Notes: a model not told the origin generated them from the letters alone. A DNA stretch of 64,000 bases from Ylistrum balloti (GCF_031769215.1 NW_026782299.1:1736001-1800000), one strand, 5' to 3'; positions 3,307 through 64,000 are shown, counted from the stretch's first letter. Numbers and translations: made by a program.

Positions 3307-3394
3307 TCATGTTGTGAATACAGGTTTATATATTTTCCTATCCATTTTATTACTGAACCTATAAATATAAGTACATAGGAACGATACATATTTT

Positions 3395-18055: not shown

Positions 18056-21000
18056 CTTGAAGTTATTGCCAATCAGGTGCTGCATCTCATGCATAACAAG
18101 CTGTCCCGAGGCAGTAAATTCCCGATCACAGTACTGGCATATGTAACTGTCGACTTTACAAGGCTCCTCCAGTTTAACGTTGACCTCAGTGACCTCTGGT
18201 GAGTCAGTCAGCATAGCAGACTCTGTCTGACCATCTCCATTAGAAGATGTCCCATTCTCAACAGGACAGCTGGCTGCTTTTGATGTTTGGTTTAACTCAG
18301 GGGTTTCAACTTCTGAGGCAGTGTTGATTGCTTTTGAATCATCATCAACAGATGGGAGAGATACCTCAGTCTGGGAAACTTCAGAGCCATTGTCAGTAGA
18401 AGGCTTTTCTGTTGCAACATTCTCAACTTCTGTGGGTGACTTGACTGCCACTGGTTCTGTTGTTGACAAATGACAGTCCGAACTACTAGATGGGATGTCA
18501 GTCAGACTACACTCTGCAGTACTAGGGATCTGCTCTCCTGATTCATTCTTGGAGTGATCATTTTCCATATTTTTCCTACAGGCCTCTTTTTTTATCTCCC
18601 CTTGAAGTAACTGTGCCACATACAGAGCTTCTGTGATATCAGGTTCCTTTGACTGTTTCATTCGATCCATCTGTCCATTTTGAGCTAGCCAGTTGGAGAG
18701 CTCGGGTAGAGGAGAGAAGTGGACTTTGATGTGTTGAGTCAGTAGGTGTTGTTTGGATGCCGTGTAATCACAGTAGGGACATGCCAGGTCACTGCGAATC
18801 ATGTGGAATTTAAGGTGAGACAGCAAGTGGTCACGTCGAACATTAGCATAGGGACAGCGATCACAGCGATAGAGCTTTTTAGGTTCAGATTCGGAATCAG
18901 CTGAATTTTCAAACAGCTCCAGATGATCATGAGTGACATTGACAGTGAATGATTCTTTCGTGTCTAGAGGTGGCAGAGCACTGGCCAAAGCAACGTCTGC
19001 AGGGACCTCAGGTAGCTGTAGAAGATTTGATAAAGACTGGGCAACCATAAGATTCTGGTTGGGAGTTCTATGTAGCTTCTCATGCTGGGCTAACAGGTTC
19101 TGTGAAGGCACACTGTAGTCACAGTATCTACATCCACATCGCTGCTTACTGCCATGAAGTTCCACATGGTGCTCATAATGCGATCGTTTTGCACTGGCAT
19201 AGGGACATTTTTCACAGCTATATTTCTTGAACCTGGCTATCTCATAAAGTGTGTCCACTTTGCTCTCATATGGGATGTCAACGATATCTGACTTGTCATC
19301 TACATCCTCTTCTGCACCACCTCCTTCAATGGCTTCAAGGTCAGAGATTGTAGTGTCAGAGATATCCATCATGTATCCAGGCTGGTGCACCTTGAGATGA
19401 TGGGAAATTAAGCCCTTGGAACCTACATAATAGTCACAATGGGGACATTTCAACAGAGGGTTCCTTGATATCCGGACATTGTGCATCATTTCATGCAATT
19501 TGAGGTTCCTCAGACGAACAGTCATGTAGGGACATTTCTTACACTTCTGAAGTTTCTTGTAGACACCATTTCTGAACACATAACCAGGCTTGTTACCAAC
19601 TGAGCAGGCAATCTTCATGGGAGACATCAGGGGTTTCTGGGATATACTCGGCATTATCTTAGAGGCGATGACTTTCTGTTTGTAGTTGGCAAGCTGTACC
19701 ATATCATAGATACTACTGGACTCTGAAAAGTCCGATTTGCAGGGTGAGGATTGTGCTGAGCTGTTAGTGCTCTTTGCTGCAGGCGATTGGTGATTGATCT
19801 CATGTACTTTCATGTGCTGCTTAAGCAAACGTCGGTGTGTTACCCAGTAGTCACACAAATGACACTTGAACTCTGCATTCTCCTTTGGCTTGTGGAACTG
19901 CTTGTGGTAGAGGTAATCATTCTTACTATTACTGGTGTAAGGACACTTCTCACAGCGGTGACGCTTCGGAGTGGTAGGAATACTAGGCGCAACAGTCTTA
20001 ACGGGTGTTGTGGGAGTTGGGAAAACCACCTCTTTGGTAGTACTTGTAGTAGTTTCTTTATAAACATTTCCCTCATGAAGTTTGATATGCTGACGGAGAA
20101 GTCTCTGAGCCACAACAAAGTATGGACAATAAGGACACTTGACCTGTTGGGCACCTGGCTGGGCCTTGTGACAGCTCATGTGGAACTGCAGTAGGTTGGA
20201 CTTGTCAGTACGGTAGGGACATACATCACACTTGAATCGCCGCTCTGTGACACGAACCTCACCTTTGGATCTTTTTTCATCCTTGAAATACTTTCGTACT
20301 CTAAGCACTTTTCCTTTGCTTCCTCCACCTTTGTGTTTCTCGCGCAGATGCCTTGTGACACAAGATCTCCAGCTGGACTGAAATCCACACAATTTGCACT
20401 TGAACATATCATAATGATCATCTGGCTCTGCGTCCTTCCAGTCAAAGTCCTCCCTTTCTCTGTTGTCAATTGGCTCCATCATCTGCCCATCCTTGCCTTG
20501 CTTGACACATTTGATAGCAGACCTACAGAGGGACAAATTTTCACTATGATGCCTGACCCGAATATGTCTACAGGCAGAGCTTCGATAGTTGGTGGCATAG
20601 TTACAGATAGAACATTTGTAGGCCTTCACATTGTGCATACTAAGATGGTTGATCACAACAGTTCTGTCAAGATTTTTGAATGAACATTTTCCACACTTCC
20701 ATATATTTGATAGACCACTGTTGTTTTTCGACTGAGAATTTTCATCAGCCTCTCTTTTTTTCCTTGGATTGTAGTTATATTCCATCAATGACACTTTTGC
20801 CTCCTCTGTATCCATGACAACCAGTCTGGAGCGCCCGCCATGTTTACGTTTCGTGTGGCGTACAATGTCACTTCGCCAGTTAGATCTGTAAGGACATCCA
20901 GAGCATTTGAATTGCTTGTAGACTCCCTTGCTAGGTACATTTTGTGGACTTGTTGTCTTGGTTGCCTTCTCAGCTTCCTGCATTACTGCCTTTTTGTATG

Positions 21001-24000
21001 CACTGGAGACATGAGTGGTCTGGCTGAACTGTGCCATATACTCATCATGGGTAGCACGAGCATCTGCCTCTGTCAGTGCGATCATATGGGCTGTCGTACT
21101 GCCAGGATGTTTCATTCTAATGTGTTTATTTAGGTCCCATTTCCAGTTGGACCGGCGTCCACAGTCAGAGCACTGGAATGGCTTACAGTAGCCAAATACT
21201 TTCGGATCAGCTGAAGCAATAGGCAGTCCTCCAGGATAATTACTATAAGGCCGTCTGCCAGGTGAAGGCCCCTTTGCTGGAGATGAGACAGGAGTTGTTG
21301 GACTGTTTGGTACCGTGGTATTAAATCTGTCATGTGGTGCATTTGGATTTTCTTGGTAAAACACCCTTACCTCCAATCCTGGATGGATATAGTTATAGTG
21401 CTTCTTAATATCTGCCTTTGTAGCACTACGTTTTCCACAATCCCCACACATAAATGGTTTAATAAGACTAGCTGCCGAGACCCGGTTCTGTGCAAACTCA
21501 GGGGTCTGTTTCTCTGGAGTGGCTTCTACATCATTCATTACGCCCTTGCTGGGGGTCTTTTCAATCTCGCGCATGCTTGAGGTGGATGAGGATGATGACA
21601 ACTTCCTTTTGTTGTTGCGTGGTATGGGAGGTTCTTCTGGAAGCATCTTAGTCCCACTATCGTCAGTGTACCAAATTTTGATAGGCTGGTTAGGATGCCT
21701 ATAATGGTAGTGTTTTCTAATGTCGGCTTTAATATTTCCAGTTTTTCCACATTCCACACATTTGTAAGGCTTGTCTTTATCTCCTGGTTCTGATACATAA
21801 AATGGTGGAAGATTGCTTGTGGAAGTATCAGAAGCCACTACTGGAGTGGACATCTTAGGCTCCGTAGGTAAGCTCATACGTGGGATTTTTATCTGGATTT
21901 CTTCATCTACATCTTCTTCGACCAAGCAGATGATGTCTACATTCAAACCACTGTGTGAGTTACGAATGTGTCTACTCACAGCGACACGAGTACTAGAGTT
22001 GTAATCACAGGCACTACAGACAAAACTGTTGCCAGGTTTGCCTGCCTCTCCATCCTCCTCATTGGTAGCAGGAACATTGAGGTGGTGATCTCGACGCACC
22101 ACTGGCATGGTGTCCAAATACGTCTGGATGGTGGCTTCAGCCTCCTGCCGGCTGAGTTTTACCACGTCAAGGACAGTGTCTGGATGATCCTTTCTAATGT
22201 GTTTCCTGATGTCCCACTTCCAGTTGGCACGTCGTCCACATACAGGACACATGTATTGCTTCAGGTTTGTATGGGTTGATACATGTGCTTTTAGCTTGGA
22301 TTTCGCATTGGTAATAAAGTCACAGTAATTGCAGCGATATAGACCTGACGGCGATGCTTTCAATGGTGAGGACTCTGAATCACTGTCATCATCATCATCT
22401 TCATCAAATACCTGGTCTGTGTCACGACTAGAATTGCTTTCAATCTCCATTTTCTCACCATCCAATGGTTCAGTAACATCCTTGTCCTTTCCTGGTAGCT
22501 TGTCTGTCAGGATGGTGATAACATCATCCAATACTACATCATCCACCATGACAGCCGGGTGATGTTTGTACATGTGTCTGCGAATGTCGCCCTTCCAGTG
22601 TGTCTGGTATACACAATGTTTGCAACAGAAGGGTTTGTCACCCTTATGGAGTTTGGAGTGTCTATCAACCTCTGACTTCCATGGAGATGTGAACGAACAA
22701 GATGGACATTTAAATATAGCAGGTGAGGACTTGCGGTTAGGAATAGTAGGAACCTTAACATGTTTGACTGAGCCAGGCTCTTTTTTGTGATCCCGTCTGA
22801 GGTGGACATTAAGGTCACCAACATACTTGTATTGTTTATTACAGTGTGGACACTTATATCGTTTCTCTACAGTGTGAACGACCATGTGACGTTGCAGATC
22901 ACTGGGCCACTTTGCGATATAGGTACAGTAGCAGCATTTGAGACTGTCCTTGTCCGTAATATCATCTACATCTTTGGAGGACACAGAAAGGTCCAATGGT
23001 CCATCCCCAGCCTCCTCTTGCTGCTGCTCAACCTCTGCTTCTGCTAGATTTGGCGCTGAAGTATTTGCATATAGGTCAATATCACGTAGATACTGTTTCA
23101 CAGTCATCTTATGCTTTAATTTCATGTGGCGATTCAGGTCAGAAGAACGTTTGTACTTGAGCCCACAAAGGGGACAGAAGAAGCTTCCCTCTACTGTCTG
23201 AAGGCTAGGAATTCCCTCACTTAAAATTTCACTGTCAGATATATTCAAAGATGTACCTTTCTGTTTGCCAAGAACTGGTGAGGCTACTGTAAGCTTCACA
23301 CCATCGGGAGGAGCTTCATCAATAGTACATTCAACAGAAGTGTCAGCATCAGGGAAAATCAGGGACACATTTTCAGCACTGTTAGTGTGATTGTTGGCCA
23401 TATGACGCTTGACAGTACCCTCATGGTCACATGAGTAGGTACAGAATTTACACTTGATGCTGTAATTGTTGGTGTGGTTGAGTCTGTGACGGTCTAAATT
23501 TGGTTTGAAGTCAGAAGTATAGTCGCACTCCATACACTTGTATGCAGTTTTACCGCTGTGTTTGGACTTGTGGGAATAATAGTCTTTCTTCTTAACCGTA
23601 GTAAAGCTGCAGATGTTACATTTGTAGGTCCTTGCATTGATGTGTATACACTGTACATGTTTAGACACACGATACTTGTCAGCATTGTTGAACAGACAGT
23701 ATTTGCACTTGAAGAGTTTCTTGCCTCCTGATGTCAGCTCCACTATGTGGTTTTCATAGCCAACAGGTAAGATGTCTTTACCGCGGGCTGCTTGTCGACC
23801 GGCAGTAGTTGTCAGGGCAATTTTCACTTTCAGTGGAGCAATGTTTTTAACAGGGCTTTCTGCTGGTGTTTTTGGAGATTTGCTCTTGTAATTGGCAGCT
23901 GCAATTTCAGTTTGGTATTCAATTTTGACATCATCAATATCAATATTGTAGCGGTGAACTAACTTAAGGTGGCGCTGTACTTTGTGGCGGTGCTTGCAGG

Positions 24001-24478
24001 CATACTCACAGAAGTTACAGGAGAAGATACTGAGGTTTTTATGATGGGTGTTAATAAGGTGATACAGGAAAGTCTTTGACTTGTTGGTCCAGTAAGTGCA
24101 CTCTGTACAACGGTATGTTCTACAATATACATTTCCTTTTCGATAGGTTTCAGTTGGTGGTGAACTGATAGAAGCTGGTTCTTCTTCAGTCTGATTATTG
24201 CAGTCACTCGATTCCAAAGGCAATTCAACGCCCTCATCTGCTGGAGAACTGGGCTCTTCTAGTTCAAGTTTTGGTAATCTGGATGTTGAGGCTGATGCAA
24301 ACAATGAGGCACCTGAAAATTTTAATTTCACCTTGTCTTGTTTAGGGGCATGGGCCTCTGTGTACCTCTCACGTTTACATCGGATCTTGTGGCGCTTGAA
24401 GATATAGGCATTCTTGGTAGAAAACATACAGCACAGGTCACATTTTAACAGGGTCAGCATGGAGTTTTTCTTCCCCAT
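18056..24478 (-). CDS. Large multi-C2H2 zinc-finger protein (about 33 fingers, REST/ZNF462/hunchback-like finger style), main exon
   Basis: Acceptor TTTTGTATTTTTCAG|GCTCCAACATG at 24486, so ATG is 24478 (the first 36 codons of the track ORF are intronic). Donor AAG|GTATGC after ...GNNFK at 18056. Repeated C-x2-C-x12-H-x3/4-H motifs; no KRAB, BTB or SCAN domain seen. Confidence 0.92.
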
Positions 24479-24599
24479 GTTGGAGCCTGAAAAATACAAA
24501 AGAAATAAAGAGGGAATAAAAACAGATGTTCGACTGAACAATTTTACAGCAATAGAAAAATGAACATTCCAAATTTTCGAAAACATTTTAAAAATAACA

Positions 24600-49612: not shown

Positions 49613-49729
49613 CTATTTCTGTGAATAATAATCAGCAATCTGATTTAACAGTCTGTCACAAAATTTCAGTTCAAGCAACTTTCTTCCTGTTTCTGTCCGT
49701 GCAGGAATGTCTGTAAGTGAAGCAAGCAG
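49613..49729 (-). CDS. ACD: TPP1/ACD shelterin subunit, last exon (LLASLTD...KLLELKFCDRLLNQIADYYSQK*)
   Basis: Acceptor GGTCTTTTTCAG|CTG, phase 0; the C-terminal amphipathic segment sits where the vertebrate TIN2-binding motif lies. Confidence 0.7.
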   Translation of the reverse strand: MLASLTDIPARTETGRKLLELKFCDRLLNQIADYYSQK

Positions 49730-51136
49730 CTGAAAAAGACCGAAATCAAAAGTTGAAAAAAGCATGCTTCCACAAAAACACCAATAACCTGGAATATCAT
49801 ATTTGTAGTTTTAGAACCAAACAATGTATAATTTTATCTTCTTTTAAGTAGCTGTGAAATGTCAGGGTTATCTGCTATTTTTAGCTCATTTGGACTTCAG
49901 GGATTTTATATTCTGTCCTAATTTGGTTTGAAGCATCCTTGGATGAAGAGGGGTATCAATTTTGTATAAACAAGAGGTCTCCACCTTAAACATGAGGGGC
50001 TCCGCCTAATAGGGGTAGGAATGTCCGGATTTTGTCACAATTTAGTCTGATGTGTCCTCTGGTATGTGGAAATCAATATTGTTTCAATGATAGTTCTATA
50101 CCCTTTGAGGCAGGAAGGGTGGGTGTAGGAATGTGTAGCTTCTTTCCCAAGTTTGTCAAAAGCATACTTTCATGAAGGAGACTTTTGTTAAATGGTTTGG
50201 CTGACCCCCTAGGCTCTGATGGTTGAGGTCAAAAGGGCATTCCTTTTCCCTTTGTTGGGATAGAGCAGTTAAAGCCATAAAAACCCAGCTGAGTGATTAA
50301 GACCCCATGGACCTTTTGTTTCAAGATTATAAACAACAATACTGAAGCAAAACATGTCTTCTACAGCCCCCACATAAAAACAACAAGAAAATACCAATAT
50401 GAGCACATAATTGTAATCTAAACTCAAATTCAATAAAACTCTATCAAAACATGAACAATTATGCAGATTTATGTGGATATTCTTGAAAAAGTAACAAGAG
50501 AATAATACCAGGTGTTCCAAAAGAATAATCATCTTCAACCCTCAATCAAAAGAGGTAAGATGCAGCTGTTTGAAATTAACTCATCATAATACAGATTTTA
50601 AAGAACTTGCTCTATGTCCACTATTTGGCCACCATTTGATCCCAATGGGCCAGATCCCACTGTTCATACATAATTGATCTCCTTTTTCCTAACATGTCTC
50701 GCACCAAATTGGGACAGAATAAAGGGAACTGTAAAGATTCTAAAAGTTTAATTTTAATTTCCCCTTTTTGGCCTGCCCCTCATGTCTCCTTAGGATTTAT
50801 CAACTTTTCTTTAACAATTTACAACCCCTACCTCCATATGAAGGTGCTTAAGATCAAATTTGGTTAAAATCTATGCAGTGGTTATTTAGGCTGTTGAGCT
50901 AGTAATTACATGGCGGGTGTCGTCTATGAAACAGATACCTGGAATCTGGAATACTACATTTGCTTTGTCAGATAACTGGATATACTTAATGCTAAACTGA
51001 CTTCAAAGTACTGTTTTCTTCAAGTGTGATGTCATCTTCATTCTGAATCAGATGTCAATACAACATTCATTGTTGATGTGAACTCCTTACTATTTTTAAC
51101 TTTGTTCAATATCAAAGATTCCTACTTTTTACATAC

Positions 51137-51462
51137 CTTGGACTTGTCTGTGGGGAAAGATACATTCTGTGATTGGCTGGGTTGTACCTGTAGAGACAGG
51201 TTCTGTGATTGGCTGGGTTGTACCTGTAGAGACATGTTCTGTGATTGACTGGGTTGTACCTGTAGAGACAGGTTCTGTGATTGGCTGGGTTGTACCTGTA
51301 GAGACAGGTTCTGTGATTGACTGGGTTGTACCTGTAGAGACAGGTTCTGTGACTGGCTGGGTTGTACCTGTAGAGACAGGTTCTGTGATTGGCTGGCTGA
51401 CTGGAGAGATTCGTCCTCTGATAAATCATTCTGATCCTCAATCCTATTTTTATACTTTAAGA
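51137..51462 (-). CDS. ACD: TPP1/ACD exon 11, with six 36-bp repeats encoding QNLSLQVQPSQS
   Basis: Acceptor TCTTGATTTTTACAG|TC (phase 1), donor CAAG|GTATGT (phase 0). Confidence 0.72.
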
Positions 51463-51489
51463 CTGTAAAAATCAAGAGTATTGATGAAA

Positions 51490-53600
51490 CAATGAATGCT
51501 TTCCGAAAATCACTTGATGTGACACAAAATTTTAACAATGCGCAATAATTATGTAAGTGAGGGATTTCAGATCCTGAATTTGGTATACAAAGTGCAATGC
51601 CTCTAAAACTGAAGGGTCGAGGGCCCTGAATTTGGTATACTGCCAATTCTCTTATTATGACCAATGTATACATAAAGTTTCTTAACCCGAATTTTAATGC
51701 AAGCGAAGTTATGCTCATGAAACAAAATTTTAATAACGGACAACAAATCTATGATTTAAGGGTTTGCAGACCCTAAAATTGATACACTGCACTTTGTTTT
51801 AGTGTGATAAATGTATAAACCAAGTTTTGTTATCCTGGCTTAAATGAATACAAAGTTATGCTATGGACAAAACAATTCTTACAAAAGGGTAATAAATTAT
51901 GTAATTAAAGGGTCTAAGGCCTTGTGTTTGCTTCACTGTGCACTGCACACTGTCTTAACATCAACAATGTATACACTAAGTTTCATTATCCATGTTTAAT
52001 TGTGGGGTAAGATATGCTAAAAACAAGACATTTTTAACAATGGGTAATAACTCTGTAATTGGAGAGTTGAGAGGCCCCAGAATTTAGCATATGGCAAATT
52101 GTCTTAGAATGCTTCATTATTCTAGTTTATATGCAAACAATTTAAAACTATGCTCTGCCCACTAAATTTTAACAAAGGTCAGGAACTCTAATCAAGGTGT
52201 TGAGGACCCTGAATTATGTACAATGCACATCGTTTTAGTATAATCAATGTATACACTAAGTTTCATTTCCCAAGTTTGAAAGCAAAGAAATTTAAAAAAA
52301 AAAGGGCAATAACTCCGTAATGGAGGTGTCAAAAGCCCTGAATTTGGTGCACTGTACAGTGCTCTTTGCCATAGTATGAAAAATTACTGTATACACCAAG
52401 TTTTATGATCCTTGCTGAACTTTTGGCAAAGTTATGCTCCAGACATGAAAAGATAGATGGAAAGACCGCAAAATGGATAGATACACAAAGCTGCAACTCT
52501 ACGCTTCCCCAAAATATTTGGGGGGAGCATACAAAAAAAAAAAAAAAAAACCATGAGAAACAGTGAAACTGAAGAATGCACGCCCTAAAATGACTTCACT
52601 GGACACAAAATTTTAAGAAAGGGCCATAACTCTCTAATTTTGGGGTCAAGGGCCCTTAATTTGGTACAAAGTATATTGTCTTATTATGATCAAATGTATA
52701 CACCAAGTTTCATGATTCTGGTTTAAATGCAAGCAAAGTTATGCTCATATCTAAATTTTTATTAATGGCCAATAATTCTGTTCTGAGAGGCCTGGGACAC
52801 CAACTTTGCTACACTGCATCTTGCTTTAGAATAACTGATGTATATATTATATTTCAATATCCTAGTTTAAACACAGTCAAAGTAATGCTCTGAACACAAA
52901 ATTTTAACAAAATGCCATAACTATTCAATTTAGAGGTCAATGGCACTGAATTTGGTACACAGCATATTGTCTAAGTATCATCAATGATTACACCAAGTTT
53001 CATGATAATTGCTTAACTGTTGGCAAAGTTCTGCTCCGCACAAATTTTTTTAACAAAGGGCAATAATTCTGAAACTGAGGAGTCAAAAGCCCTGAAGTTG
53101 GTACACTGGACATTGTGTATTCATAAAGTTTCATTATGCTAGTCTAAATGCAAGCAATCTAAAAGTGTGCTCTAGACACAAAATTTTAACATTAGACATA
53201 AACTCTGTTATTAAGGGGTTGCAGGCCTGAGTTTGGTATATTGTACATCATATTAGTACAATCAAAGTATATGCCATGCTTTGTTATCCTAGTTTTAATG
53301 CAAGCAAAGCTCTGCACATGACAAGATTTAATAAAGGCCAATGACTCTGTTCTGAGGGGGTCAGGGGCCCTGACTTGCCTACAATGCATCTTGCTTTTGT
53401 ATAACAGATGTATACATCATGTTTCAATATCCTAGTTTAAATGCAGGCAAAGTAACCCTCCAGACACAAATTTTTAACAAAGGGCAATAGACTTTGTAAT
53501 CAAGGGGTTGTGGGCCCTTACATTGGTACACTGCACATTGTCTTCCTATAATCAATGTATACATTAAGTTTCATTATCCTGCCTTTTTCATATTATGCAT
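51490..53600 (+). mobile_element. Stacked HINE-like elements with diverged internal satellite units of about 145 bp
   Basis: GCCCTGAATTTGG / TGTATACACxAAGTTTCAT / GCAAAGTTATGCTC recur every 135-155 bp; terminal hairpin GCTTCCCC...GGGGGAGC plus A-run at 52503-52550. Confidence 0.7.
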
Positions 53601-53939
53601 AATTAAGATGCAATTGCCAAATGCATTCATTCTTCAGCAAATTCTGGATAAGTGAGGTGAATTAGTTTGAAGCTATGAAAAAAAGGAGGAAAATATTAGT
53701 GTAACCAAGAATACATTATTTTTCTATGAACATTGCACACACAGCCAGCTGATTATGTAACTGGTTAAATACAATGAAAAGCCTAACAGATTTTAACAGA
53801 TAGTCAATCATCCTATCTAACAAATTTCCCATCACTATGATGTAGTGACTCCAGTAATGTCCCATTGTGACCGTAATGCAGTAAGTTCCCAAGAATGACT
53901 GGCTGTAGCCTTACACAAAGATATGATCAGGTGGGAATA

Positions 53940-54770
53940 TTCAGTTGTGACACCACCTGAAGCAGTGACCTAGGACGGTTGAGTTGTAACTTGACATGAA
54001 GTAGTGAACAAAGCATTTCAAGTTGTAACATTACCTGAAGTTGGGACCAAGGAATGTCCAGTTGTGACCTTACCAGAGGTATTTCGGAACATTTTTTCAG
54101 GTTGATATAGTCAACAGAATAATTTCTTATAATACAACCAGTAGAGATTAAAATGTCACATTTTGTTCACAACTTTATCACCTTCATCAGAATGAAGTGT
54201 ATTATCATTAATGTATGGGACGCCTGAGATGGTAAAGAACTGACAGACAAGAGGTAGTGATCCTGTAACGTCAAGTTGTAAAATTACACTGAGCCCAGGA
54301 ATGTCCAGTTGTGACCGTACCTGAAGTAGTGACCCAAGCATATCTAGTTGTGATCTTACCCTAGGTAGAGACCCAAGAATGTCTAGTTGCAACATCACAT
54401 GAGGAAGTGACAAAGGAATGTCCAGTTGTGACCGTACCTGATGTAGTGACCCAAGCATATCTAGTTGTGATCTTACCCTAGGTAGAGACCCAGGAATGTC
54501 TAGTTGCAACATCACATGAGGAAGTGACAAAGGAATGTCCAGTTGTGACCGTACCTGATGTAGTGACCCAAGCATATCTAGTTGTGATCTTACCCTAGGT
54601 AGAAACCCAGGAATGTCTAGTTGCAACATCACATGAGGAAGTGACAAAGAAATGTCCAGTTGTGACCGTACCTGAAGTAGGGACCCAAGAATGTCTAATT
54701 GCAACCAAACACAAATTTGTGACAAGAAGAAATATCCAGTTACAACTTTACATGAAGTGGAGAACACTTA
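53940..54770. repeat. 39-bp repeat arranged as a 117-bp trimer (about 3 copies) with degenerate flanks, intronic
   Basis: Three alternating 39-bp subunits (ATGTCCAGTTGTGACCGTACC.., ATATCTAGTTGTGATCTTACC.., ATGTCTAGTTGCAACATCACA..); explains ORF 54156-54767. Confidence 0.88.
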
Positions 54771-54959
54771 CAAACCATAGCATAGAAAACTTACTGCATG
54801 AAATAATCCTGTGATTATGTCCATTTGCAACTTTTCTTGAACGCTTACTCAAATGGCTGTTGTTAGGAATGTCCTTTTTTACCAGCAGATCAGAGAGTGA
54901 CCATCAGACCTTTACTGTCCAAGAGTGACATCCACACCTTTACTGTCCACACCACTTAC

Positions 54960-55830
54960 CTGATTGGCTTACTTCAGAAGATGTACTGTCATGGCTACTG
55001 TTGATGATGATAGCCTCATTAAACGAGTCCATAACAGATTGTGCTTCACCAGTCATACAGTGGTCTTCATCAGCACTCCTTGATATTGTCTCTTTGATTG
55101 CTGACCTATCCTTGCCTATTATTGCAGATTCTGGGGAGTTGTTCAAAATCTCTATAGATTCGTCCCCAAGATTTGGTTGGCCAGAAATGTCTTTGCTAAT
55201 CAAGGCTGTGTCTTCACTTCTTTCTAAAGAAGATCTTCCTCTTTTTCGTTTAGCACCAGAGAAAAATAGACGTCGCTTTGTTAATTGACTATCAGGTTCA
55301 CTGTCTGTTTGGGAAGATGGTGTCTCATCTTTAGTTACTTTATTGCTCACATCTTGATGTTTAACTGAAAGGAGTTGATCTTCTGTTTGATATCCATTAC
55401 AATTTGTTTGGAGCACATCTAGATCTTTTAAAGATGACATTTGCCTGTATAAAGTTGTCTCTGGCAATGATACCCTACACTGAGAGAAACTTTTACTGGG
55501 TGTAGCCAGTTTTTCTAGTCTCTCATCTTCCTCTCTTTCTAAAGCTTCCAAATATGCCTTGCATCGAGTTGGTGACACTGCATCTGCAATACTGGTGATC
55601 CTTTTTCTGTTGAAATCTACGATGGATCCATTCTCAGGGGACAGACACGGGACAAAGTGCTGGGACTCCTGATTAACTGGCATCTGTAATGACTGTGAAA
55701 TACTGATATTAGATCTCTTAATTGATCTTTGTTTTTTAGAAGGAGTAACTTCAAGTTCCGCATCAGCTAAAACCACATTTGAGCTCGTTGTTTTATCTGT
55801 ATTAACATCAATTTCAGCTAGAGGCAGATT
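54960..55830 (-). CDS. ACD: TPP1/ACD exon 10 (Ser/Thr-rich linker)
   Basis: Long open frame (track ORF 54940-55866), donor TCAG|GTAAGT phase 1; the phase-0 acceptor at 55830 is the least certain boundary of the model. Confidence 0.75.
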
Positions 55831-56004
55831 CTGTGTTTGATTGATTAAAGGACTGATGCTGGACAATGACCCACAGATTCAAGATGATTTGAACAATACA
55901 TTGCAATGACAGAATTGTGATAGATTGAATAAACAGATAAGTGATATATATGACATTAAAGATTAAATGATATTAACCATTAAGGCAAACTTTAAGTCAC
56001 TTAC

Positions 56005-56045
56005 ATGATTATCTGTTCTTTCCTCTGGTGTAACATCCTTTCTCC
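56005..56045 (-). CDS. ACD: TPP1/ACD exon 9 (GRKDVTPEERTDNH)
   Basis: TTTTAATAG|GG ... CAT|GTAAGT, phase 1-0. Confidence 0.7.
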
Positions 56046-56350
56046 CTATTAAAATCAAATGCCGATCTTACTTTTGACATCTGTAGTCAGCCCTGTTAGT
56101 CTGATATAATTCCAAACAGTGACAGACCTATCTTATCAACAATTAAACAAACTTGTCACAAGCAACAATATTGAAGAAATTATTTGTGCACCCCGATTTC
56201 AGCCATTTCATAACAACATTATCATGCAACTATGGTATTTATTATCAAACATAACTTTGCAAATGTAGAAAAGCATTTGATTTTGCCTTTATTTATTTTT
56301 ATACAAATACCGACCTTATACCTCAAACTAACGATGGTTTACATCGATAC

Positions 56351-56503
56351 CTTTTTTCAGAGATGATGGTTGACATAATGTCTCCATGCTTGATACATCA
56401 TCCACTAACGTGTGCGTCACATAGCTGACAGTCTTGTCACTAGAGCCCGTCTCCTCTGAACTGGCTGTTACACCAATTTCTGGCATGTAACCTTCTTTCC
56501 ACT
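56351..56503 (-). CDS. ACD: TPP1/ACD exon 8 (EWKEGYMPEIG...SSLKK)
   Basis: TGTTGTAAG|AG ... AAAG|GTATCG, phase 1-1, open frame. Confidence 0.72.
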
Positions 56504-57408
56504 CTTACAACATAATTATGTTATGGTATAAATGTTACAATATTGAACTTTCATGTTGACTTTAAACTACTACAGTCTTTGTAATCAAAATAACTACAAT
56601 TTCGTGAAAATGGAGATAAAAACTGACTGATGATTACAAATTATCAAAATAGGATTGATTGACTTGTAAACTACTAAAAACCTCTTAAACAAGGCTGAAA
56701 TCAGTCAGCAATATAAGACTATTCATTTCAAGTACCTGTGCACTTAATAAATATAACAGTACTGTTAAAGTGGTTTTATTTTGGGTCTTTTTTGGCTGGA
56801 TAAATTTTTTGTCCTTTGGATGTGCAAAAACAATTAAGCATTAAAAACAGACTTTAGAGTTCAATATTGCCTGGCAAATTCCTACTTCCAAAAGTCAGTA
56901 AAAAAACACCTTTTGAAATGATATCTGAATTAAAAAAAAAAACAATTTGAGAAATTTTCAAAGTCCTTGCTTCACTTGCATGGCTCCAAGAATCAGTGCA
57001 ATGATGGAGCATGAAATCCATTGATCAGGTAAATATGTTATCTATAAGGGACTCAATTTTCACAAGAACTGTATTTTGCAGTTGAAATATAATTGCGGAA
57101 AATTATGAAAATTCGAAACACATAAAAATAACAACTTGTGGTTTAATATAACAAGAACTGATGTTAGCTGACAATTCCGCTTATCAACTTCTTTTCTCTA
57201 AACATTCCAAGAGATTTTAGATTTGGTGACATTTGCTTACTATGTATCTGGTACAAAAACTAAGATCAAATTTGAACTCAAAATCAACACATGATTGGTA
57301 AATAGCTTCAACAAAACAACCAAATACACAGGCTAAATCTATAATTTGTGTATATCCAACAGCTGACTACAGAGTTTAGGAATGACTTTGTAAAGACAAC
57401 ACGCTCAC

Positions 57409-57519
57409 CTGCAATATCCTGTAAAATAACCTGCTCATGTTCTGGTATCAAGAAATCTCTAACTATAAATGGTCTTCTCAAATCCTCGGTAATGGACAGT
57501 TCTTTGTTGTATACCATCT
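57409..57519 (-). CDS. ACD: TPP1/ACD exon 7 (MVYNKE...DFLIPEHEQVILQDIA)
   Basis: GCGTTTTCAG|AG ... GCAG|GTGAGC; FLIPEHEQVILQDI resembles human TPP1 LCISENDQLILSSL of the POT1-binding region (recalled sequence). Confidence 0.8.
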
Positions 57520-57670
57520 CTGAAAACGCATAGAAATAGCATAGTTAATTCCACTTAAGTTTGAGGAAGTTTAAAATCTTTATACAAGGGCATGAATCAA
57601 ATCATATTTTCTTCCCATTTAAATATCTTAAAAAGAAAATCACCCCTGCAACACATCTGTATTTATTGTA

Positions 57671-58260
57671 AAACAAGAGGCCCACTGAGCCAGCGTTGCT
57701 CACCCAGAACTCATTGTTGCCTTGTATATGAATCATGAACATCTCTTTCTGAAAACTTTGTTAGGCTCCATCCTAGGTGACTACAAACCATATATCATGA
57801 TCTAACCATGATGTAGACTTTTACAGATTTGTTAATCAGGCCATCATTTGAATGTTGTGGCCTTTAATATGGATCATTTATTTTTTGCAAACTTCATTTG
57901 GCATCATCCTACCAACCTACCACATCATCATCAAAGTATTTTATTGCAGTTGATCAGAAGAAATTGTTTTGAAGGTTTTAACTTATTTGACACCTGTGTC
58001 CTTGAAAATGGGTCAAGGATAATTCTTTTCAGAAATTTTGTTGGGCTTCATTGCAGGAACCTGTCAGCTAACATCATTATTCTAGACCTTGTAGTTAATT
58101 AGCAGAAGTTGTTTAATGGGTTTGGCCTATGATTTCTGTGAGCTTGAATATGGGTCATGGTCACTCCTTTCTGCAAATTTTGATGGGGTTTACTCAAAGG
58201 AGCCTAATGTCAAATACAGGCTGGACTTATTGATGGATAACACCTCATGGAATAAGCTAA
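57671..58260 (+). mobile_element. HINE-like element fragment in a TPP1 intron
   Basis: Starts AAACAAGAGGCCC, as the 9076 copy does; internal TTGGCxTCAT...CTAxTGTCAxxTAxCA repeats. Confidence 0.55.
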
Positions 58261-58377
58261 CTTGCCATTTAGATGAACTAAAACAATAGCTTTATCAAAT
58301 TCATCTTTTGTTTTCTTTTGCACTTGAATCTGTACCATATAAACGCCATATGGCAATCAAAACACTTAAGACCTTAC

Positions 58378-58730
58378 GTTTCCATGTTGTCTTTCTCGTC
58401 GTTTTCTCCCGACTTCCATGCATTACTGTATCTTCATCCATTTCAGCCAAGTCTTTCTTCTTACCCTGCCAAACTTTTTCATCTTGTATATGCAAACTGT
58501 CTGTAACCCTTTTTGTGCTTTGTCCGGTTGCCATGTTTTTTGATCCCTCCATAGTCCTTTTCTTGGTTTTTTTCTTTGGAGTCACATCTTTTGGTGTATC
58601 ATTGACATCTTTTGCGATTTCCTCCAGAAGTTGTGTAACAGAAATACTAGACATTGATTCATTTTGTTGTGATAAATCTGATGTTATTGGCATGGTATTT
58701 CTCAGCACTTCTTCTCTTTGCCATTCAATT
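58378..58730 (-). CDS. ACD: TPP1/ACD exon 6 (IEWQREEV...SISVTQLLEEIAKD...TTWK)
   Basis: CCTTTTCAG|A ... AAAC|GTAAGG; ISVTQLLEEI resembles human LSLSQLLDEM (recalled sequence). Confidence 0.82.
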
Positions 58731-58789
58731 CTGAAAAGGTGAAGAAAATTGGTACTTTTTCTGGTATCCAAATAAAAACAATAAATCAG

Positions 58790-59900
58790 AGAAAACCAAA
58801 AAAATGTACCAGTTAGAGTTGGGTCTAAAGTCACACCTCACAGATAAAGGAAAGTCCAAAATTGAAAGATATATCAAAAAAGTAAGGTACGAGTCCGGGA
58901 AATTACTGACATATCAGTTGTAATGAGGTCATAGGTGGGGCCAAATCTTATCCTATCATAAATCTCCATACGAGGTAGTCTAAGGGTTAAAAATATTAAA
59001 TATTATCTCTGTTTTCCTGGCTATTGTTTCATAACATTGTCAACAAACGGAGATATCTCACTGGTCAAAGTCACCAGTATCTCTGGTCAAAGTAAGGTAC
59101 GACAATCTATCCAAGATAGTAGACATTAGAGTTCAAGGGGAGTGCTTGCAACTAAGTCCTCCCTACCTCTGATCAATATGGTTTTCACCAGGGGATGAAG
59201 ATTATTTGAGGTAAAATACATTAAATGCAGGAAAGTCTCACAAAGTGGGACAAGTGGCCATTACTCACCTGGATTTTAAAGCCTAGCAATGGTATACATG
59301 CCTAAAGGTTAGGTATTTCAAATATTTTCAAATTACAGCTCAGTCACTTATCCCCTTTGGTAAGACCAATGGGTAAATTCTTATCTCCCGACCGTTTCCT
59401 TCTTTTGATTACTGCTCTACTGCTTCAAAGATGTAACACTAAAACTTAGTCTCTTCAGGTGGGGTCAGACTCCAGGGCAAATTCTTACATCACAGTTTTG
59501 TTTAACTCTCTATTCCCAACAATGCTATATATGGTTGTGGAGAGGAGATCTTGACTATTTCAAAGATATAGCCAATTTCCAGGATTGGGTCCCTTTTACC
59601 CAAAGTGCTTCACACCAAATTTGGGCAAAATCTAATCATTCCTACAGGAGGAGCAGGATTTTATAGAACTTCTGAAACTCCCCTTTTGGGCTCTGCCCCT
59701 CAGGCCCTGGGGGATCAGGACACATCATTTATATTAAATATGTTCCATTTCTCTCAAGGATGCTTTTGACCAAAGTTGGTCGAAATCTGCTCAGTCATTC
59801 AAGACTAGTAGTGATTTTTAGAAGAAGTTGATAGATGATGTCTGATGGATGGTAGACCCCACACCATGCACCAAAAGCAAAATGTCAGCTCTCAAAGAAC
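58790..59900 (+). mobile_element. HINE-like element(s) in TPP1 intron 5
   Basis: GGTCAAAGTCACC, CACCAAATTTGG and GACCAAAGTTGG motifs and a GATAGATGATG...GATGGATGG tail; related to 43040-43544. Confidence 0.55.
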
Positions 59901-60008
59901 CATTTTTTTTTGTGCAGGAATCATCAACCTGCATGAACATCACTAGCAAGGACAACTTTCTGGTTTCCTTCCCTGCTCTATCATTTTACGCTAGAGAGGA
60001 CAACTCAC

Positions 60009-60062
60009 TGCTTTTCTTCCCATAGGTCTTTCATTTTCCTTTGTATTCTTGCATCTTGATCA
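60009..60062 (-). CDS. ACD: TPP1/ACD exon 5 (CDQDARIQRKMKDLWEEK)
   Basis: TTTTATTGCAG|T ... AGCA|GTGAGT; resembles human CNQDLDVQKKLYDCLEEH (recalled sequence); the split codon restores the Cys. Confidence 0.85.
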
Positions 60063-61137
60063 CTGCAATAAAAATGTTTTGTCTGTGAACAATTGTGATG
60101 ATAATAAGACTTAAGGGTAACTATGGACAAATGATAGACACAATTAGTAACCCTTTTAGTCGTGCTTAATGTGATTATAAAACAGAATAAAGATTTCAAG
60201 AGGTCGTCATTTGTACTAAAATTAGTTGATGTTACAGAATATATGGATAGCAGTTAATCATTTGCTGTCAAAATGTCTTCAAATCCACAGCATCATTTTT
60301 TGAAATCAATAAAACACTTATTATGACAATTTAAAATTTTGGTTCCATAACTAGACAGGTACAAACTGATATAACCTGCAAATAAGAGAAATGTCTGTGT
60401 ATTTACAGGGATATCACTTATACCAAATCTGGCTCCTCAGCCAAAATAACAGATATGTGTAAAGAAAGTGCTTCATATTCTAGTGAAAACAAGCTCATCA
60501 ACTACCTCTCAATCCATTAGCTATACATAAATGAACAAAGCTGTTGATATTACATTAACACTGAGCCAAACTCACATAATCATTCATCCAAGTAAATATG
60601 AATTATTTTTCCCACAATGCAATATGTTAGCAATGAAATATACCAGGAAAAAAAGAAAAAAAAAAGCTGCTGGTGTCAAGGTAAAGATAGTGTTTTTATT
60701 AAACTACATTTTAATTTAAGGGGAAACAAAGCCTACTATAGTTCAGAGTCTTTAAAGAACAGATAAGAGATTGTTGGTGTCCTACAACAAGCATCTATTT
60801 TATATATATTTCAGTCATGATCAATTGTTTAGCTAAAATCGACAAGCCAAATATTAACATCAATTCTGTATTTTCCCAAGTAAGCACACCTGATCCTGTT
60901 ATCTGGTTTTTTAAGGGGCTTAATATTTCAAATGCAATATCTTTCAGAACTGTCAGGAATTAGGTCCACAGCTCAGTATAAAGAACCCTTAACCGGTGTA
61001 AAATGGTAATTCTGTCTCGTTAATTTTCCAACAATAAAAAAGTGTAGTACAGTTCTGTGGTGAAAAGTAGTGCATTAGTTTGTTGGATGAACAGATGTGT
61101 TTTCTGTAAGAAAGTAATTTATGGAGGGATATAGTAC

Positions 61138-61226
61138 CAGTGGATGAGTCTGTGTTTTCTTTGGAAGCCTTCCTGCAGATCCCAGAGTCTGAAGTTGTCA
61201 ATATGGAGAACAAATTCACACTTGGC
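61138..61226 (-). CDS. ACD: TPP1/ACD exon 4 (AKCEFVLHIDNFRLWDLQEGFQRKHRLIH)
   Basis: TTGTTTCCACAG|GCC; EFVLHIDNFRL resembles human EFYLQVDRFSL. Donor TG|GTACTA is weak but gives the correct phase. Confidence 0.82.
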
Positions 61227-61510
61227 CTGTGGAAACAATTACCATCAGCATTACCCTATTGGGAATACCAGTGTTATCCAGCATTTTATAGTCATTTCTG
61301 ATTATCTGTTCCAACAGAATATTGATCAATAAGAATCTAATAGAAGCGGATATGCTTTACATGGTCAACTGTCATCAGATTATAAAGAAGTGATTCAATT
61401 TCATATTAAAGAAATATTCACTCATGGTCATCATGAATTTCAGATCTGGCTTAAAATCTAAGCAGTTTTGCAGGAAAATATATTGATGACATTTTCATGG
61501 AAATAAATAC

Positions 61511-61604
61511 CAGATTTTTGTGAGGTCGAAATTCTGTGTGGTACTTGCAGACCAGCAGTAAAGCCTGGTTCCATTCTACAGGGCAGCTGTTGGAATCCTC
61601 CAGT
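61511..61604 (-). CDS. ACD: TPP1/ACD exon 3 (LEDSNSCPVEWNQALLLVCKYHTEFRPHKNL)
   Basis: GTGTTGCAG|A ... CTG|GTATTT, phase 2-0. Confidence 0.82.
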
Positions 61605-62319
61605 CTGCAACACACGAGTTGGTATAAATATGAATAACTACGAGGTGTTTAACCATTCTCAAGATTTGTTATCAAAACAAGATGAACAGTAACATATGTC
61701 AACAAATACCATACATGCATCTGTAATGCTAAGCCGTAATCATTTATCTTGAGTGGAAAATTGTACAGCATCAGACTTTGCAACATCAGGTGATATTTAA
61801 TCTCTCCTCCAGTGGTTCATATTCCTCAGAAAGCTGATATTACAGGCAATCCCTGTGCTGTTGTGGTTGCGTCAATATTTTATTTGAATTACTATAGCTC
61901 TGGTTAACATTAAACAGACCTCCCACACAATGATGATGTTCAGTAATGTAGCCACAAACTACACAAGACCGCACCTCAAAAGGACTCTGCATAGCAACAA
62001 GGAGAAACACAGCCAACCAACAAAATTGAAAGTTTCAATACTAGAATTTGTCTTTTCTTCTTTTCTCTTACAAACATGATGCCATACCTGATCCAATAAG
62101 TCTAATGTGAATAAAGATACTTCAAACAATTATTAATAACTGACTTTTTTATAAGTTAATAAAGATTTGTTGTGCCTGCCACAACCTCATGAAATATCAC
62201 ATGATTTCTGATTTGAAGAAGGCAAAACTCAAATGTTGGATATCTTCATATTGCATTTTAAAAGTTTAGAATAAAGTTACAAATATTGCCTTAGACATAC
62301 TAATGCAACATTAACTCAC

Positions 62320-62426
62320 TCCTGTCTAAATTTCTGCACAGCATCTGCTGAGAAGACAGCTCTAATGATAACCTCTCTGTCTGCAACGTCTCGCACCACA
62401 CTGCCATCACCCAGTATCTCTATATC
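62320..62426 (-). CDS. ACD: TPP1/ACD exon 2 (DIEILGDGSVVRDVADREVIIRAVFSADAVQKFRQE)
   Basis: GTTCTTGCAG|GAT ... AGGA|GTGAGT; VADREVIIRAVFSADAV resembles human VSDGTHSVRCLVTREAL of the OB fold. Confidence 0.85.
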
Positions 62427-63134
62427 CTGCAAGAACAATCAATAATTATTTTGTGCTCAACTTCACATTTTCAATGACTACATTACAATTAAGTGTATAT
62501 GGATAATAATCAGTTGTCGACTGACGCTTCGTTGTATATCTACATCAATAACCCCAACCAGAAAACTGCAGCAATCAAACCGATACCTTTTCACTTTATA
62601 AAATACTCATAGACATATACATGTTTGTGTGCTTCAATCATAAAGTAATCATCTTGACCAGGTCTACCATTGATCATAACATGATACCAGTAAATAGATA
62701 TGACCAAATAGGGGTATTTACTTACAATACAAAAGCAGTAAATTTTGAAAATAATTTGAATTCTTTTAAATATGCAAGTTATTCCTGGCATCACATCATT
62801 TGGTTTTAGAATATGTCATCAAATACATACTTTATATGTTGTTTTTTTGAGTCCGGTGAAGAGTATTTGTCTAATCCTGGACAGGAAATCAATTTAACTT
62901 GAAGTAGTTTTTTTCGTGTGTCGAGTCTGTTTTCTTTATTTTGGGAGCTTTTTTCGAATTCATATTTGCATTTAGCTCAAATAAATACTTTCTCAATCAC
63001 GAACGGAAACATTTTGGCATGTGTGCAAGATCTGGGTGAATATGAGAAAGACTTTGGCATTTAGTGGTACCGTTCGGACCCTTTCTAATCCCTTACCACC
63101 TTGTAACTAAAGTCGTGAGTATCGGGACACGTAC

Positions 63135-63251
63135 TCTAATTACGTCAATGGTTTGACTTTTCTGTTTTCGTGTTGGACTGCAAATACAATTGACAATCCA
63201 TGGGTGTTGTTTTAAAGAACAGTTATGTGAACCAAATTTCGATCGAGACAT
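63135..63251 (-). CDS. ACD: TPP1/ACD exon 1 (MSRSKF...QHPWIVNCI...SQTIDVIR)
   Basis: ATG at 63251, donor AGA|GTACGT; PWI motif typical of the TPP1/Est3 N-terminus. Confidence 0.82.
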
Positions 63252-63482
63252 CTTGAATCCATCACAACTCTTTTTGGATCTTTCCCGCCATCTTGTGCAA
63301 ATAATACTCTTCAACAAATGTTTCGGGTTAAATGCATAATATTTCGAACGTATTTTCTTTTTCAGCAAGTCATCTATCTCTAATGAAAAATATTTTTAAC
63401 GAACCTTTAATTATTTGATTAGCCAGAGTTATATATATATTTCGAAATAGCAATGTTTCAAGGATAGTTCACCAATAGGTTC

Positions 63483-63496
63483 TGACGTCACCGGAA
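63483..63496. promoter_or_regulatory. CRE (TGACGTCA) next to an ETS-like CCGGAA, about 230 bp upstream of the TPP1 ATG
   Basis: TGACGTCACCGGAA; motif match and position only. Confidence 0.4.
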
Positions 63497-64000
63497 AGCG
63501 CTTACTCAAACATAAAAAAATATTGTTGTTGGAATCTGCTTCAGAAATTGCCCTTTTGGGGCTTAAACTTCACTATGTCGAGGACTGCACGGATGCCACA
63601 TAGGCAGCAGAACGGAATGGTGGAAGTGAAAAGCAAGGTATGACAGAACAATGCATATGAACTTAGTTGAATATACAGGTAACTCCGTTAAAGCTACACA
63701 AGGTGTGTCGTTGAGACCCACTTCCTGGGATCTATTTTTAGCTCACTTCCATTTGTTTACATTACTGATTAAACCATCAATTTACAATAAGTATTAATTG
63801 AAAACCATATTGTTTATATGATTGAATCGTTTCTTTTCTCACACAATTAGTAAGGCATATGGAGCAATTGTAATATAATGAATATCTGCTTCTGCGAAGT
63901 CGGCTCTAATGGCAATTTGTCGATAAAATCACAACCGATCGTCTGTGACATTAGATTTTCTATGTTAATTTGTTACTTGTTTAATCATTCTTTATTTGAA

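What the first reader, a model, noticed from the sequence alone, without database searches (positions are those of the whole stretch)
49613..63251. Hidden 12-exon TPP1/ACD (shelterin, telomerase-recruiting) gene
Seen: twelve segments with canonical splice sites join in consistent phase into a 2433-nt frame (810 aa): 63251-63135, 62426-62320, 61604-61511, 61226-61138, 60062-60009, 58730-58378, 57519-57409, 56503-56351, 56045-56005, 55830-54960, 51462-51137, 49729-49613. Motifs occur in the same order as in human TPP1 as I recall it: PWI; VADREVIIRAVFS (VSDGTHSVRCLVT); ALLLV (RLLLL); EFVLHIDNFRL (EFYLQVDRFSL); CDQDARIQRKM (CNQDLDVQKKL); VTQLLEEI (LSQLLDEM); LIPEHEQVIL (CISENDQLIL); and a C-terminal helix like the TIN2-binding motif. 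An acidic QELED loop aligns with the TEL-patch WEEKE knuckle. TPP1 diverges fast and can be missed in invertebrates, so this would support a vertebrate-like shelterin bridge in this animal.
Basis: partly seen in the sequence, partly recalled or inferred. Interest (0 to 1): 0.75.

Follow-up and report, generated by a model that had tools for sequence, protein, structure and literature searches.

The report
Scallop TPP1/ACD telomere gene, already predicted
The 12-exon gene is real and is the scallop version of TPP1/ACD, the telomere protein that links the chromosome-end cap to telomerase, but public databases already predict it and such invertebrate genes are already described, so it is a correct, ordinary identification.

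Summary
The twelve minus-strand segments all have GT..AG borders and join into one open 2433-nt frame of 810 aa.

The window is from the scallop Ylistrum balloti. RefSeq already predicts this gene as XP_060075230.1, "uncharacterized protein".

The TPP1/ACD reading is supported by:
- Pfam PF10341 above its gathering score.
- Human TPP1 OB-fold chains as the seven best PDB sequence hits.
- TPP1/Est3 as the best structural matches.
- A head-to-head Par-6 neighbour 324 bp away, as for human ACD and PARD6A.

No RNA run exists for this species. However, DNA conservation is confined to the exons and substitutions favour third codon positions.

The proposed POT1-binding and TIN2-binding motifs lie in conserved blocks, but no search could tie them to the human motifs. 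The TEL patch is mostly not conserved.

The Mizuhopecten orthologue is already named ACD-like, and Myler et al. 2021 describe invertebrate TPP1. This scan also noted the gene's 5' end before (s1-232066).

The parts
63135..63251 (-). Exon 1 (aa 1-39): start codon and N-terminal part of the OB domain, including the PWI motif
   Evidence: ATG with A at -3. Orthologues start at the same codon.
62320..62426 (-). Exon 2 (aa 40-75): OB strands and the start of the QELED loop
   Evidence: On its own it gives a single Pfam hit, to TPP1 PF10341 (E 0.06).
61511..61604 (-). Exon 3 (aa 75-106): OB fold
   Evidence: 82% DNA identity to Mizuhopecten, confined to the exon.
61138..61226 (-). Exon 4 (aa 107-136): OB fold, EFVLHIDNFRL strand
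60009..60062 (-). Exon 5 (aa 136-154): start of the C-terminal helix of the OB domain
58378..58730 (-). Exon 6 (aa 154-271): end of the OB helix, conserved LTQLLEE motif, then a variable basic stretch
57409..57519 (-). Exon 7 (aa 272-308): first half of the conserved block 284-358, the candidate POT1-binding (recruitment) domain
   Evidence: The block is 64-75% identical among scallops. Function is inferred.
56351..56503 (-). Exon 8 (aa 309-359): second half of the conserved block (IAEWKEGYMPE, SYV.HT..DD.SS.ET)
56005..56045 (-). Exon 9 (41 nt, aa 360-373)
   Evidence: present in the RefSeq protein. Too short for tblastn.
54960..55830 (-). Exon 10 (aa 374-663): serine/glutamine-rich variable linker. 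RefSeq uses an alternative acceptor at 55692, which drops the first 46 aa.
   Evidence: The 46 aa align with coding sequence of Pecten and Mizuhopecten. Both acceptors end in CAG.
51137..51462 (-). Exon 11 (aa 664-772): linker with a coding minisatellite (51165-51396, 6.4 copies of 36 nt, 12-aa unit SQSQNLSLQVQP)
   Evidence: The repeat is degenerate in Argopecten and absent from Mizuhopecten.
49613..49729 (-). Exon 12 (aa 773-810 plus TAG): most of a conserved C-terminal three-helix module, the candidate TIN2-binding motif
   Evidence: AlphaFold2 pLDDT 88.5 with three helices. 60-62% identity among scallops. The TIN2 role is inferred only.
63252..63575 (.). 324-bp spacer between the two start codons: presumed shared bidirectional promoter of TPP1 and Par-6
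   Evidence: 70.5% DNA identity to Mizuhopecten across 63127-63763. Promoter function is inferred.
63576..63638 (+). First coding exon of the divergent neighbour Par-6 (ends ...MVEVKSK, followed by GT)
   Evidence: The called neighbour is a 340-aa PB1 + PDZ protein, and the same is true in Mizuhopecten.

Best explanation
This is the Ylistrum balloti orthologue of TPP1/ACD, the shelterin subunit. The 810-aa protein (764 aa in the RefSeq isoform) has these parts:
- An N-terminal OB fold of the TPP1/Est3/TEBP-beta type, about aa 15-155.
- A short conserved helix motif, LTQLLEE.
- A strongly conserved block at aa 284-358.
- A long serine/glutamine-rich linker of about 400 aa that is poorly conserved (about 41% identity among scallops) and carries a 12-aa coding repeat.
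- A conserved C-terminal module of three short helices.

By analogy with mammalian TPP1, three functions are inferred:
- The OB fold would contact telomerase.
- The 284-358 block would bind the C-terminal OB fold of POT1.
- The C-terminal helices would tether the protein to TIN2.
The protein would thereby bridge the single-strand and double-strand parts of the telomere cap.

Shown here: gene structure, coding constraint, family membership of the OB fold, orthology by synteny, and the pattern of conserved islands. Inferred only: every interaction and the telomere function.
For: Gene model:
- All introns are GT-AG and the frame is open.
- The model is identical to XP_060075230.1 apart from one acceptor.
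- Orthologue tblastn hits fall on the same exon borders.
- DNA conservation is limited to exons.
- Substitutions are in excess at third codon positions, p = 7e-10.

Family:
- PF10341 TPP1 scores 28.0 bits against a cutoff of 26.5 on P0001, and 33.0 bits on the Mizuhopecten orthologue.
- Exon 2 alone has TPP1 as its only Pfam hit.
- phmmer of aa 1-200 against the PDB gives human TPP1/ACD as the seven best hits, E from 0.002, covering the whole OB domain.
- ESM Atlas, by features: the three nearest clusters carry TPP1/Est3/TEBP_beta families (0.93, 0.93, 0.91). By structure: TM 0.78 over residues 9-160 to the chordate TPP1/Est3 cluster, ahead of RPA OB folds.
- Foldseek with my own model: the seven hits at E <= 0.001 are six human TPP1 chains and one chain of the yeast telomerase holoenzyme. 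Est3, Tetrahymena telomerase chains and TEBP-beta follow.

Orthology:
- Par-6 (PB1 + PDZ) lies head-to-head 324 bp away in Ylistrum and in Mizuhopecten.
- Human ACD and PARD6A are listed 132 bp apart (PMC8220202).

Architecture:
- Three conserved islands (OB 63-75%, block 284-358 64-75%, C-terminus 60-62%) are separated by regions of 32-42% identity.
- This matches the OB / recruitment domain / variable linker of 50-700 aa / C-terminal TIN2 site layout described by Myler et al. 2021.
Against: - The Pfam score is only just above threshold, and the Pecten orthologue falls below it (22.3 bits).
- A profile of the four scallop OB domains did not recover TPP1 from the PDB; its top hit was an unrelated dioxygenase at E 0.07.
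- My AlphaFold2 model of the OB region has low confidence (mean pLDDT 48), so Foldseek TM-scores are only about 0.3.
- No RNA run exists for this species, so no junction is confirmed by transcripts.
- The candidate POT1-binding and TIN2-binding regions gave no match to human TPP1 by sequence, profile, fold or language-model search.
- Only 2 of the 7 human TEL-patch residues are identical in the alignment.
Confidence: 0.9

Rival explanations
1. A member of the wider TPP1/Est3/TEBP-beta OB superfamily that no longer works in a shelterin-like bridge. For example, it may have kept only a telomerase-related or unrelated nuclear role, and the conserved block and C-terminal helices bind other partners.
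For: No search linked the 284-358 block or the C-terminus to the human POT1-binding or TIN2-binding motifs. Myler et al. did not find the TIN2-binding helix in most invertebrates. The TEL patch is mostly not conserved.
Against: The conserved islands stand in the same order and positions as in TPP1. Synteny with Par-6 argues for one-to-one orthology with ACD. Myler et al. report all five invertebrate shelterin subunits.
Confidence: 0.06
2. A generic OB-fold (RPA70N-like) or merely OB-like domain at the head of a disordered nuclear protein. On this reading the TPP1 hits are near-threshold chance.
For: The Pfam score is marginal and one orthologue is below threshold. The scallop profile failed to hit TPP1. 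RPA N-terminal OB folds also appear in both structural lists.
Against: TPP1-family entries rank first in four different kinds of search, and RPA folds rank clearly lower. The Par-6 neighbourhood matches human ACD.
Confidence: 0.03
3. The gene is not expressed as modelled: it is a pseudogene, or the model is chimeric.
For: There are no RNA runs for this species.
Against: The frame is open across 12 exons. Conservation is exon-limited and substitutions favour third positions. The same exon set is found in three other scallops.
Confidence: 0.01

Closest known systems
Human TPP1/ACD (PDB 2I46, 7TRE chain C, 7QXA chain O)
   Same: The N-terminal OB fold aligns over its full length, and the best structural matches are TPP1. 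The order OB, conserved mid block, long disordered linker, C-terminal helices is the same. The immediate neighbour is Par-6/PARD6A.
   Different: Identity in the OB domain is only about 20%. There is no counterpart of the human N-terminal extension before Met87. Of the TEL-patch residues, only E168 and L183 are identical and E171 becomes D. The linker is about 400 aa and carries a 12-aa repeat. The POT1-binding and TIN2-binding motifs are not detectably similar.
Mizuhopecten yessoensis OWF48206.1 'Adrenocortical dysplasia protein-like' / XP_021357963.1
   Same: Full-length orthologue: 47% identity overall and 73-75% in the OB domain. It has the same exon borders and the same head-to-head Par-6 neighbour.
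   Different: It lacks the 12-aa repeat array of exon 11 and has a longer insert at the start of exon 10.
Invertebrate TPP1 as described by Myler et al. 2021 (PMC8653790)
   Same: An OB fold matching pfam10341, a recruitment domain, and a variable linker of 50-700 aa.
   Different: That paper did not find the C-terminal TIN2-binding helix in most invertebrates, two starfish excepted. Scallops do have a conserved, confidently helical C-terminal module, but its equivalence to that motif is untested.
Yeast Est3 and ciliate TEBP-beta / Tetrahymena p50
   Same: Same OB-fold superfamily. They appear among the nearest matches by language-model features and by structure.
   Different: They are single-domain or differently built proteins without the long linker and C-terminal module, and they rank below human TPP1.

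Membership tests
TPP1/ACD (Pfam PF10341) | Scores at or above Pfam's gathering threshold for PF10341 | tested here: met
   P0001 (N-terminus identical to the window's product) scores 28.0 bits against 26.5. The Mizuhopecten orthologue scores 33.0. The Pecten orthologue scores 22.3, below threshold.
TPP1/ACD | N-terminal OB fold structurally closest to TPP1/Est3/TEBP-beta rather than to other OB families | tested here: met
   The Atlas model has TM 0.78 over residues 9-160 to the chordate TPP1/Est3 cluster, with RPA folds lower. The top Foldseek hits are human TPP1 and a yeast telomerase holoenzyme chain, followed by Est3. Caveat: both models have low confidence.
TPP1/ACD | POT1-binding motif or recruitment domain directly after the OB fold | tested here: inconclusive
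   A strongly conserved block lies at aa 284-358, with a conserved helix motif at 185-193, in the right position. No sequence, profile or Atlas match to human TPP1 residues 266-320 was found. Two collinear motif mappings are possible.
TPP1/ACD | C-terminal TIN2-binding motif | tested here: inconclusive
   The last 48 aa are conserved in three scallops and fold into three helices at pLDDT 88.5. No match to the human motif was found by phmmer, profile, Foldseek or Atlas.
TPP1/ACD | TEL-patch residues that bind the TERT TEN domain (human E168, E169, E171, R180, L183, L212, E215) | tested here: not met
   In the alignment these map to E75, L76, D78, N87, L90, W121 and Q124: two identical and one conservative. 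Myler et al. state that these residues are not conserved outside mammals, so this does not define the family.
TPP1/ACD orthology | Conserved genomic neighbourhood with Par-6/PARD6A | tested here: met
   A PB1 + PDZ gene lies divergent at 324 bp in Ylistrum and in Mizuhopecten, and adjacent in Pecten. Human ACD and PARD6A lie 132 bp apart. Their divergent orientation in human is from my own knowledge.
Shelterin subunit | Physical binding to POT1 and TIN2, and localisation to telomeric repeats | not testable with these tools
   This needs co-folding with the scallop partners, or experiments.

The most novel reading that the evidence does not exclude
Scallop TPP1 keeps a conserved C-terminal three-helix module that is the true counterpart of the vertebrate TIN2-binding motif. 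Myler et al. 2021 did not find that motif in most invertebrates. If so, the TIN2-TPP1 tether predates the split between protostomes and deuterostomes. In addition, the TPP1/Par-6 head-to-head gene pair, with a spacer of a few hundred bases, would be conserved from bivalves to humans.
Probability: 0.4. Interest if true: 0.4.

Novelty: new member of a known kind. Interest (0 to 1): 0.2.

Why it matters
It gives a name and a slightly better gene model to an unnamed RefSeq gene in Ylistrum balloti. The longer exon 10 is supported by orthologues. It also shows that the Argopecten orthologue's name, 'serine-rich adhesin for platelets-like', does not fit the family assignment made here.

It adds nothing new in principle, because invertebrate shelterin with TPP1 is already published. 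Two small points could interest telomere biologists:
- A conserved, confidently helical C-terminal module in a clade where the TIN2-binding helix was reported as not found.
- The apparent conservation of the ACD/PARD6 divergent gene pair between bivalves and humans.

Tried and rejected
- Spliced protein: it has no reference, so it could not be handed to the search tools. I worked with exon pieces, and then with the RefSeq protein P0001, which is identical outside the 46-aa segment.
- Word search with exon 10: blank because of the length filter. Two further word searches found only the four scallops, so no deep alignment could be built.
- RNA evidence: one unlabelled run holds the DNA and none is on record as RNA. 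I therefore did not use read laying.
- PDB profile searches: the full-length scallop profile found nothing. The OB-only profile hit unrelated proteins.
- Mid region and C-terminus: single-sequence, profile, Foldseek and Atlas searches all found nothing related.
- Possible missed exon: the open 203-aa frame over the 39/117-nt repeat in intron 10 (54156-54767) is hit by no orthologue protein, so I rejected it as coding.
- Bidirectional pair: a literature search for a description of ACD/PARD6A as a bidirectional pair found nothing. Only a coordinate table shows their adjacency.
The human motif strings for the POT1-binding and TIN2-binding regions therefore rest on memory. I checked them only against the residue numbers quoted in PMC5394241 and PMC8262337.
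Full report
**1. Observation**

Every internal exon is preceded by AG and followed by GT. The phases join, and the product is a 2433-nt frame from ATG (63251) to TAG (49613), encoding 810 aa without an internal stop.

**2. Source and existing annotation**

The spliced protein has no reference, so I first scanned the exon pieces. Exon 2 alone (35 aa) has one Pfam hit among 24,736 families, and it is TPP1 PF10341 at E 0.06. A word search with exon 10 was blank because of its length filter.

The exhaustive HMMER search with exon 10 then returned five related proteins, four of them from scallops.
- P0001 is XP_060075230.1, "uncharacterized protein LOC132554918" of Ylistrum balloti.
- The others are from Mizuhopecten yessoensis, Argopecten irradians and Pecten maximus, plus one unnamed fragment assembled from a public sequencing run.

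It lacks only 46 aa at the start of exon 10, because RefSeq uses an acceptor at 55692 rather than 55830. So the gene is not hidden: it is predicted but unnamed.

The Mizuhopecten orthologue OWF48206.1 is deposited as "Adrenocortical dysplasia protein-like". The Argopecten orthologue is named "serine-rich adhesin for platelets-like", a name that does not fit the family assignment made below.

**3. Is the model a real, selected gene?**

No RNA run is on record for this organism, so I did not use read laying and looked for signs of selection instead.
Exon 9, at 41 nt, is too short to detect. Nothing else in the 15 kb is hit.
- blastn against the Mizuhopecten locus aligns essentially only the exons. 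Beyond those it aligns one dispersed repeat and the promoter region.
- The 46 aa that RefSeq omits align with coding sequence in Pecten and Mizuhopecten (for example NLPLAEIDVN against NLPLTENDTA). The Mizuhopecten protein aligns from about 55833.

Both acceptors may be used.

**4. Identity**

On P0001, whose first 373 aa are identical to the window's product, the evidence is as follows.
- Pfam: PF10341 scores 28.0 bits (gathering score 26.5) over residues 31-152. The Mizuhopecten orthologue scores 33.0 and the Pecten orthologue 22.3.
- PDB by sequence: phmmer of residues 1-200 returns human TPP1/ACD as the seven best hits, with E from 0.002.
- ESM Atlas by features: the three nearest clusters carry the TPP1, Est3 or TEBP-beta families (0.93, 0.93, 0.91).
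- ESM Atlas by structure: the best match is the chordate "Shelterin complex subunit TPP1/Est3" cluster (TM 0.78 over residues 9-160), then Est3. RPA OB folds score lower.
- My own AlphaFold2 model, built from four sequences, is poor (mean pLDDT 48). It still has the strand-strand-strand, helix, strand-strand, C-terminal helix order of an OB fold.
- Foldseek with that model: the seven hits at E <= 0.001 are six human TPP1 chains and one chain of the yeast telomerase holoenzyme. Est3, Tetrahymena telomerase chains and Oxytricha TEBP-beta follow. The TM-scores are about 0.3, so I use only the ranking.

Against this, a profile of the four scallop OB domains did not find TPP1 in the PDB. The likely reason is that an ungapped profile penalises the insertions of about ten residues in the human protein.

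**5. Orthology by neighbourhood**

The + strand at 63576-63638 encodes a short first exon ending in MVEVKSK, followed by GT. The public annotation of this contig places a 340-aa PB1 + PDZ protein, which is Par-6, divergent from the TPP1 gene with 324 bp between them.
- The same arrangement holds in Mizuhopecten, and Par-6 is adjacent in Pecten.
- The spacer and both first exons form one conserved DNA block, 70.5% identical over 665 nt.
- A table in PMC8220202 lists human ACD ending at 67,694,718 and PARD6A starting at 67,694,850 on chromosome 16, which is 132 bp apart. That the human pair is divergent is from my own knowledge.

An earlier first-stage note of this scan (s1-232066) proposed this synteny, and I confirm it.

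**6. Architecture and likely mechanism**

Among four scallops, identity to the Ylistrum protein varies by region.

| Region (aa) | Identity |
|---|---|
| OB domain, 1-165 | 63-75% |
| 166-283 | 32-40% |
| Conserved block, 284-358 | 64-75% |
| Linker | about 41% |
| Last 48 aa | 60-62% |

The linker is rich in serine and glutamine. It carries 6.4 copies of a 36-nt coding repeat in exon 11.

This is the layout that Myler et al. 2021 describe for metazoan TPP1: OB fold, recruitment domain that binds POT1, a variable linker of 50-700 aa, and a C-terminal TIN2 site.

I therefore infer that the protein bridges POT1 and TIN2 and presents its OB fold to telomerase. None of these interactions is shown here.

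**7.

*TEL patch.* The QELED loop does align with the human WEEKE knuckle. The seven human TEL-patch residues map to E75, L76, D78, N87, L90, W121 and Q124, which is two identical and one conservative. This agrees with the published statement that these residues are not conserved outside mammals.

*POT1-binding region.* No search links residues 155-360 to human TPP1.
The human string is from memory and is consistent with the residue numbers in PMC5394241.
- A second collinear mapping is equally possible. It pairs the invariant W310 with human W293, and the SYV..SSM stretch with human V305-S316.

*TIN2-binding motif.* The last 48 aa fold confidently into three helices (pLDDT 88.5). They match nothing related by phmmer, profile, Foldseek or Atlas. 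Myler et al. did not find this helix in most invertebrates. A conserved helical C-terminus in scallops is therefore a small new point, but its equivalence to the motif is untested.

**8. Verdict**

Novelty is low: the gene is already predicted, its sister orthologue is already named ACD-like, and invertebrate shelterin has been described. What this work adds is a name for an unnamed gene, a better-supported exon 10, and two modest leads (the C-terminal helical module and the ancient TPP1/Par-6 pair).

No human contig was handled, no N was filled, and no step needed referral.

Noticed in passing
window 63127-63763 and L002 9488-10125: One conserved DNA block (70.5% over 665 nt between Ylistrum and Mizuhopecten) spans TPP1 exon 1, the 324-bp spacer and Par-6 exon 1. 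This suggests a shared bidirectional promoter under constraint. Human ACD and PARD6A are likewise 132 bp apart.
   Followed up: partly
window 54294-54701 (also 53934-54081): Intron 10 holds a 39/117-nt tandem repeat whose period is a multiple of three. It keeps a 203-aa frame open on the gene's strand (54156-54767). No orthologue protein matches it, so it looks non-coding. Its unit, like the 36-nt coding repeat of exon 11, contains CAGGTA.
   Followed up: partly
window 57954-58182: A 230-nt element in intron 6 matches, on the opposite strand, a tandem array of at least six copies downstream of the Mizuhopecten gene (L002 28713-29655). It is probably a dispersed or satellite repeat shared by scallops.
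   Followed up: no
window 51165-51396: The coding minisatellite in exon 11 (12-aa unit SQSQNLSLQVQP, 6.4 copies, 95% matches) is degenerate in Argopecten and absent from Mizuhopecten, so the linker length changes quickly between scallops.
   Followed up: partly
window 5291-6799 (+): An uninterrupted 502-aa frame encodes a full-length cytochrome P450 (PF00067, E 8e-115), apparently without introns.
   Followed up: no
window 17999-24586 (-): A single 2195-aa open frame with many C2H2 zinc fingers lies in a stretch of higher GC (0.44 against about 0.35 around it).
   Followed up: no
window 2001-4000: Strong GC skew (+0.40) and AT skew (-0.17) over 2 kb, unlike the rest of the window. I did not examine it.
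   Followed up: no
L003 (Pecten maximus LR736848.1): The Pecten gene model for the orthologue spans 30 kb and has the Par-6 gene nested inside it. Its protein stops at 526 aa without the C-terminal module. This looks like an annotation problem rather than biology. Argopecten also has a second, 542-aa copy on a 62-kb contig (P0009), perhaps a haplotig.
   Followed up: no
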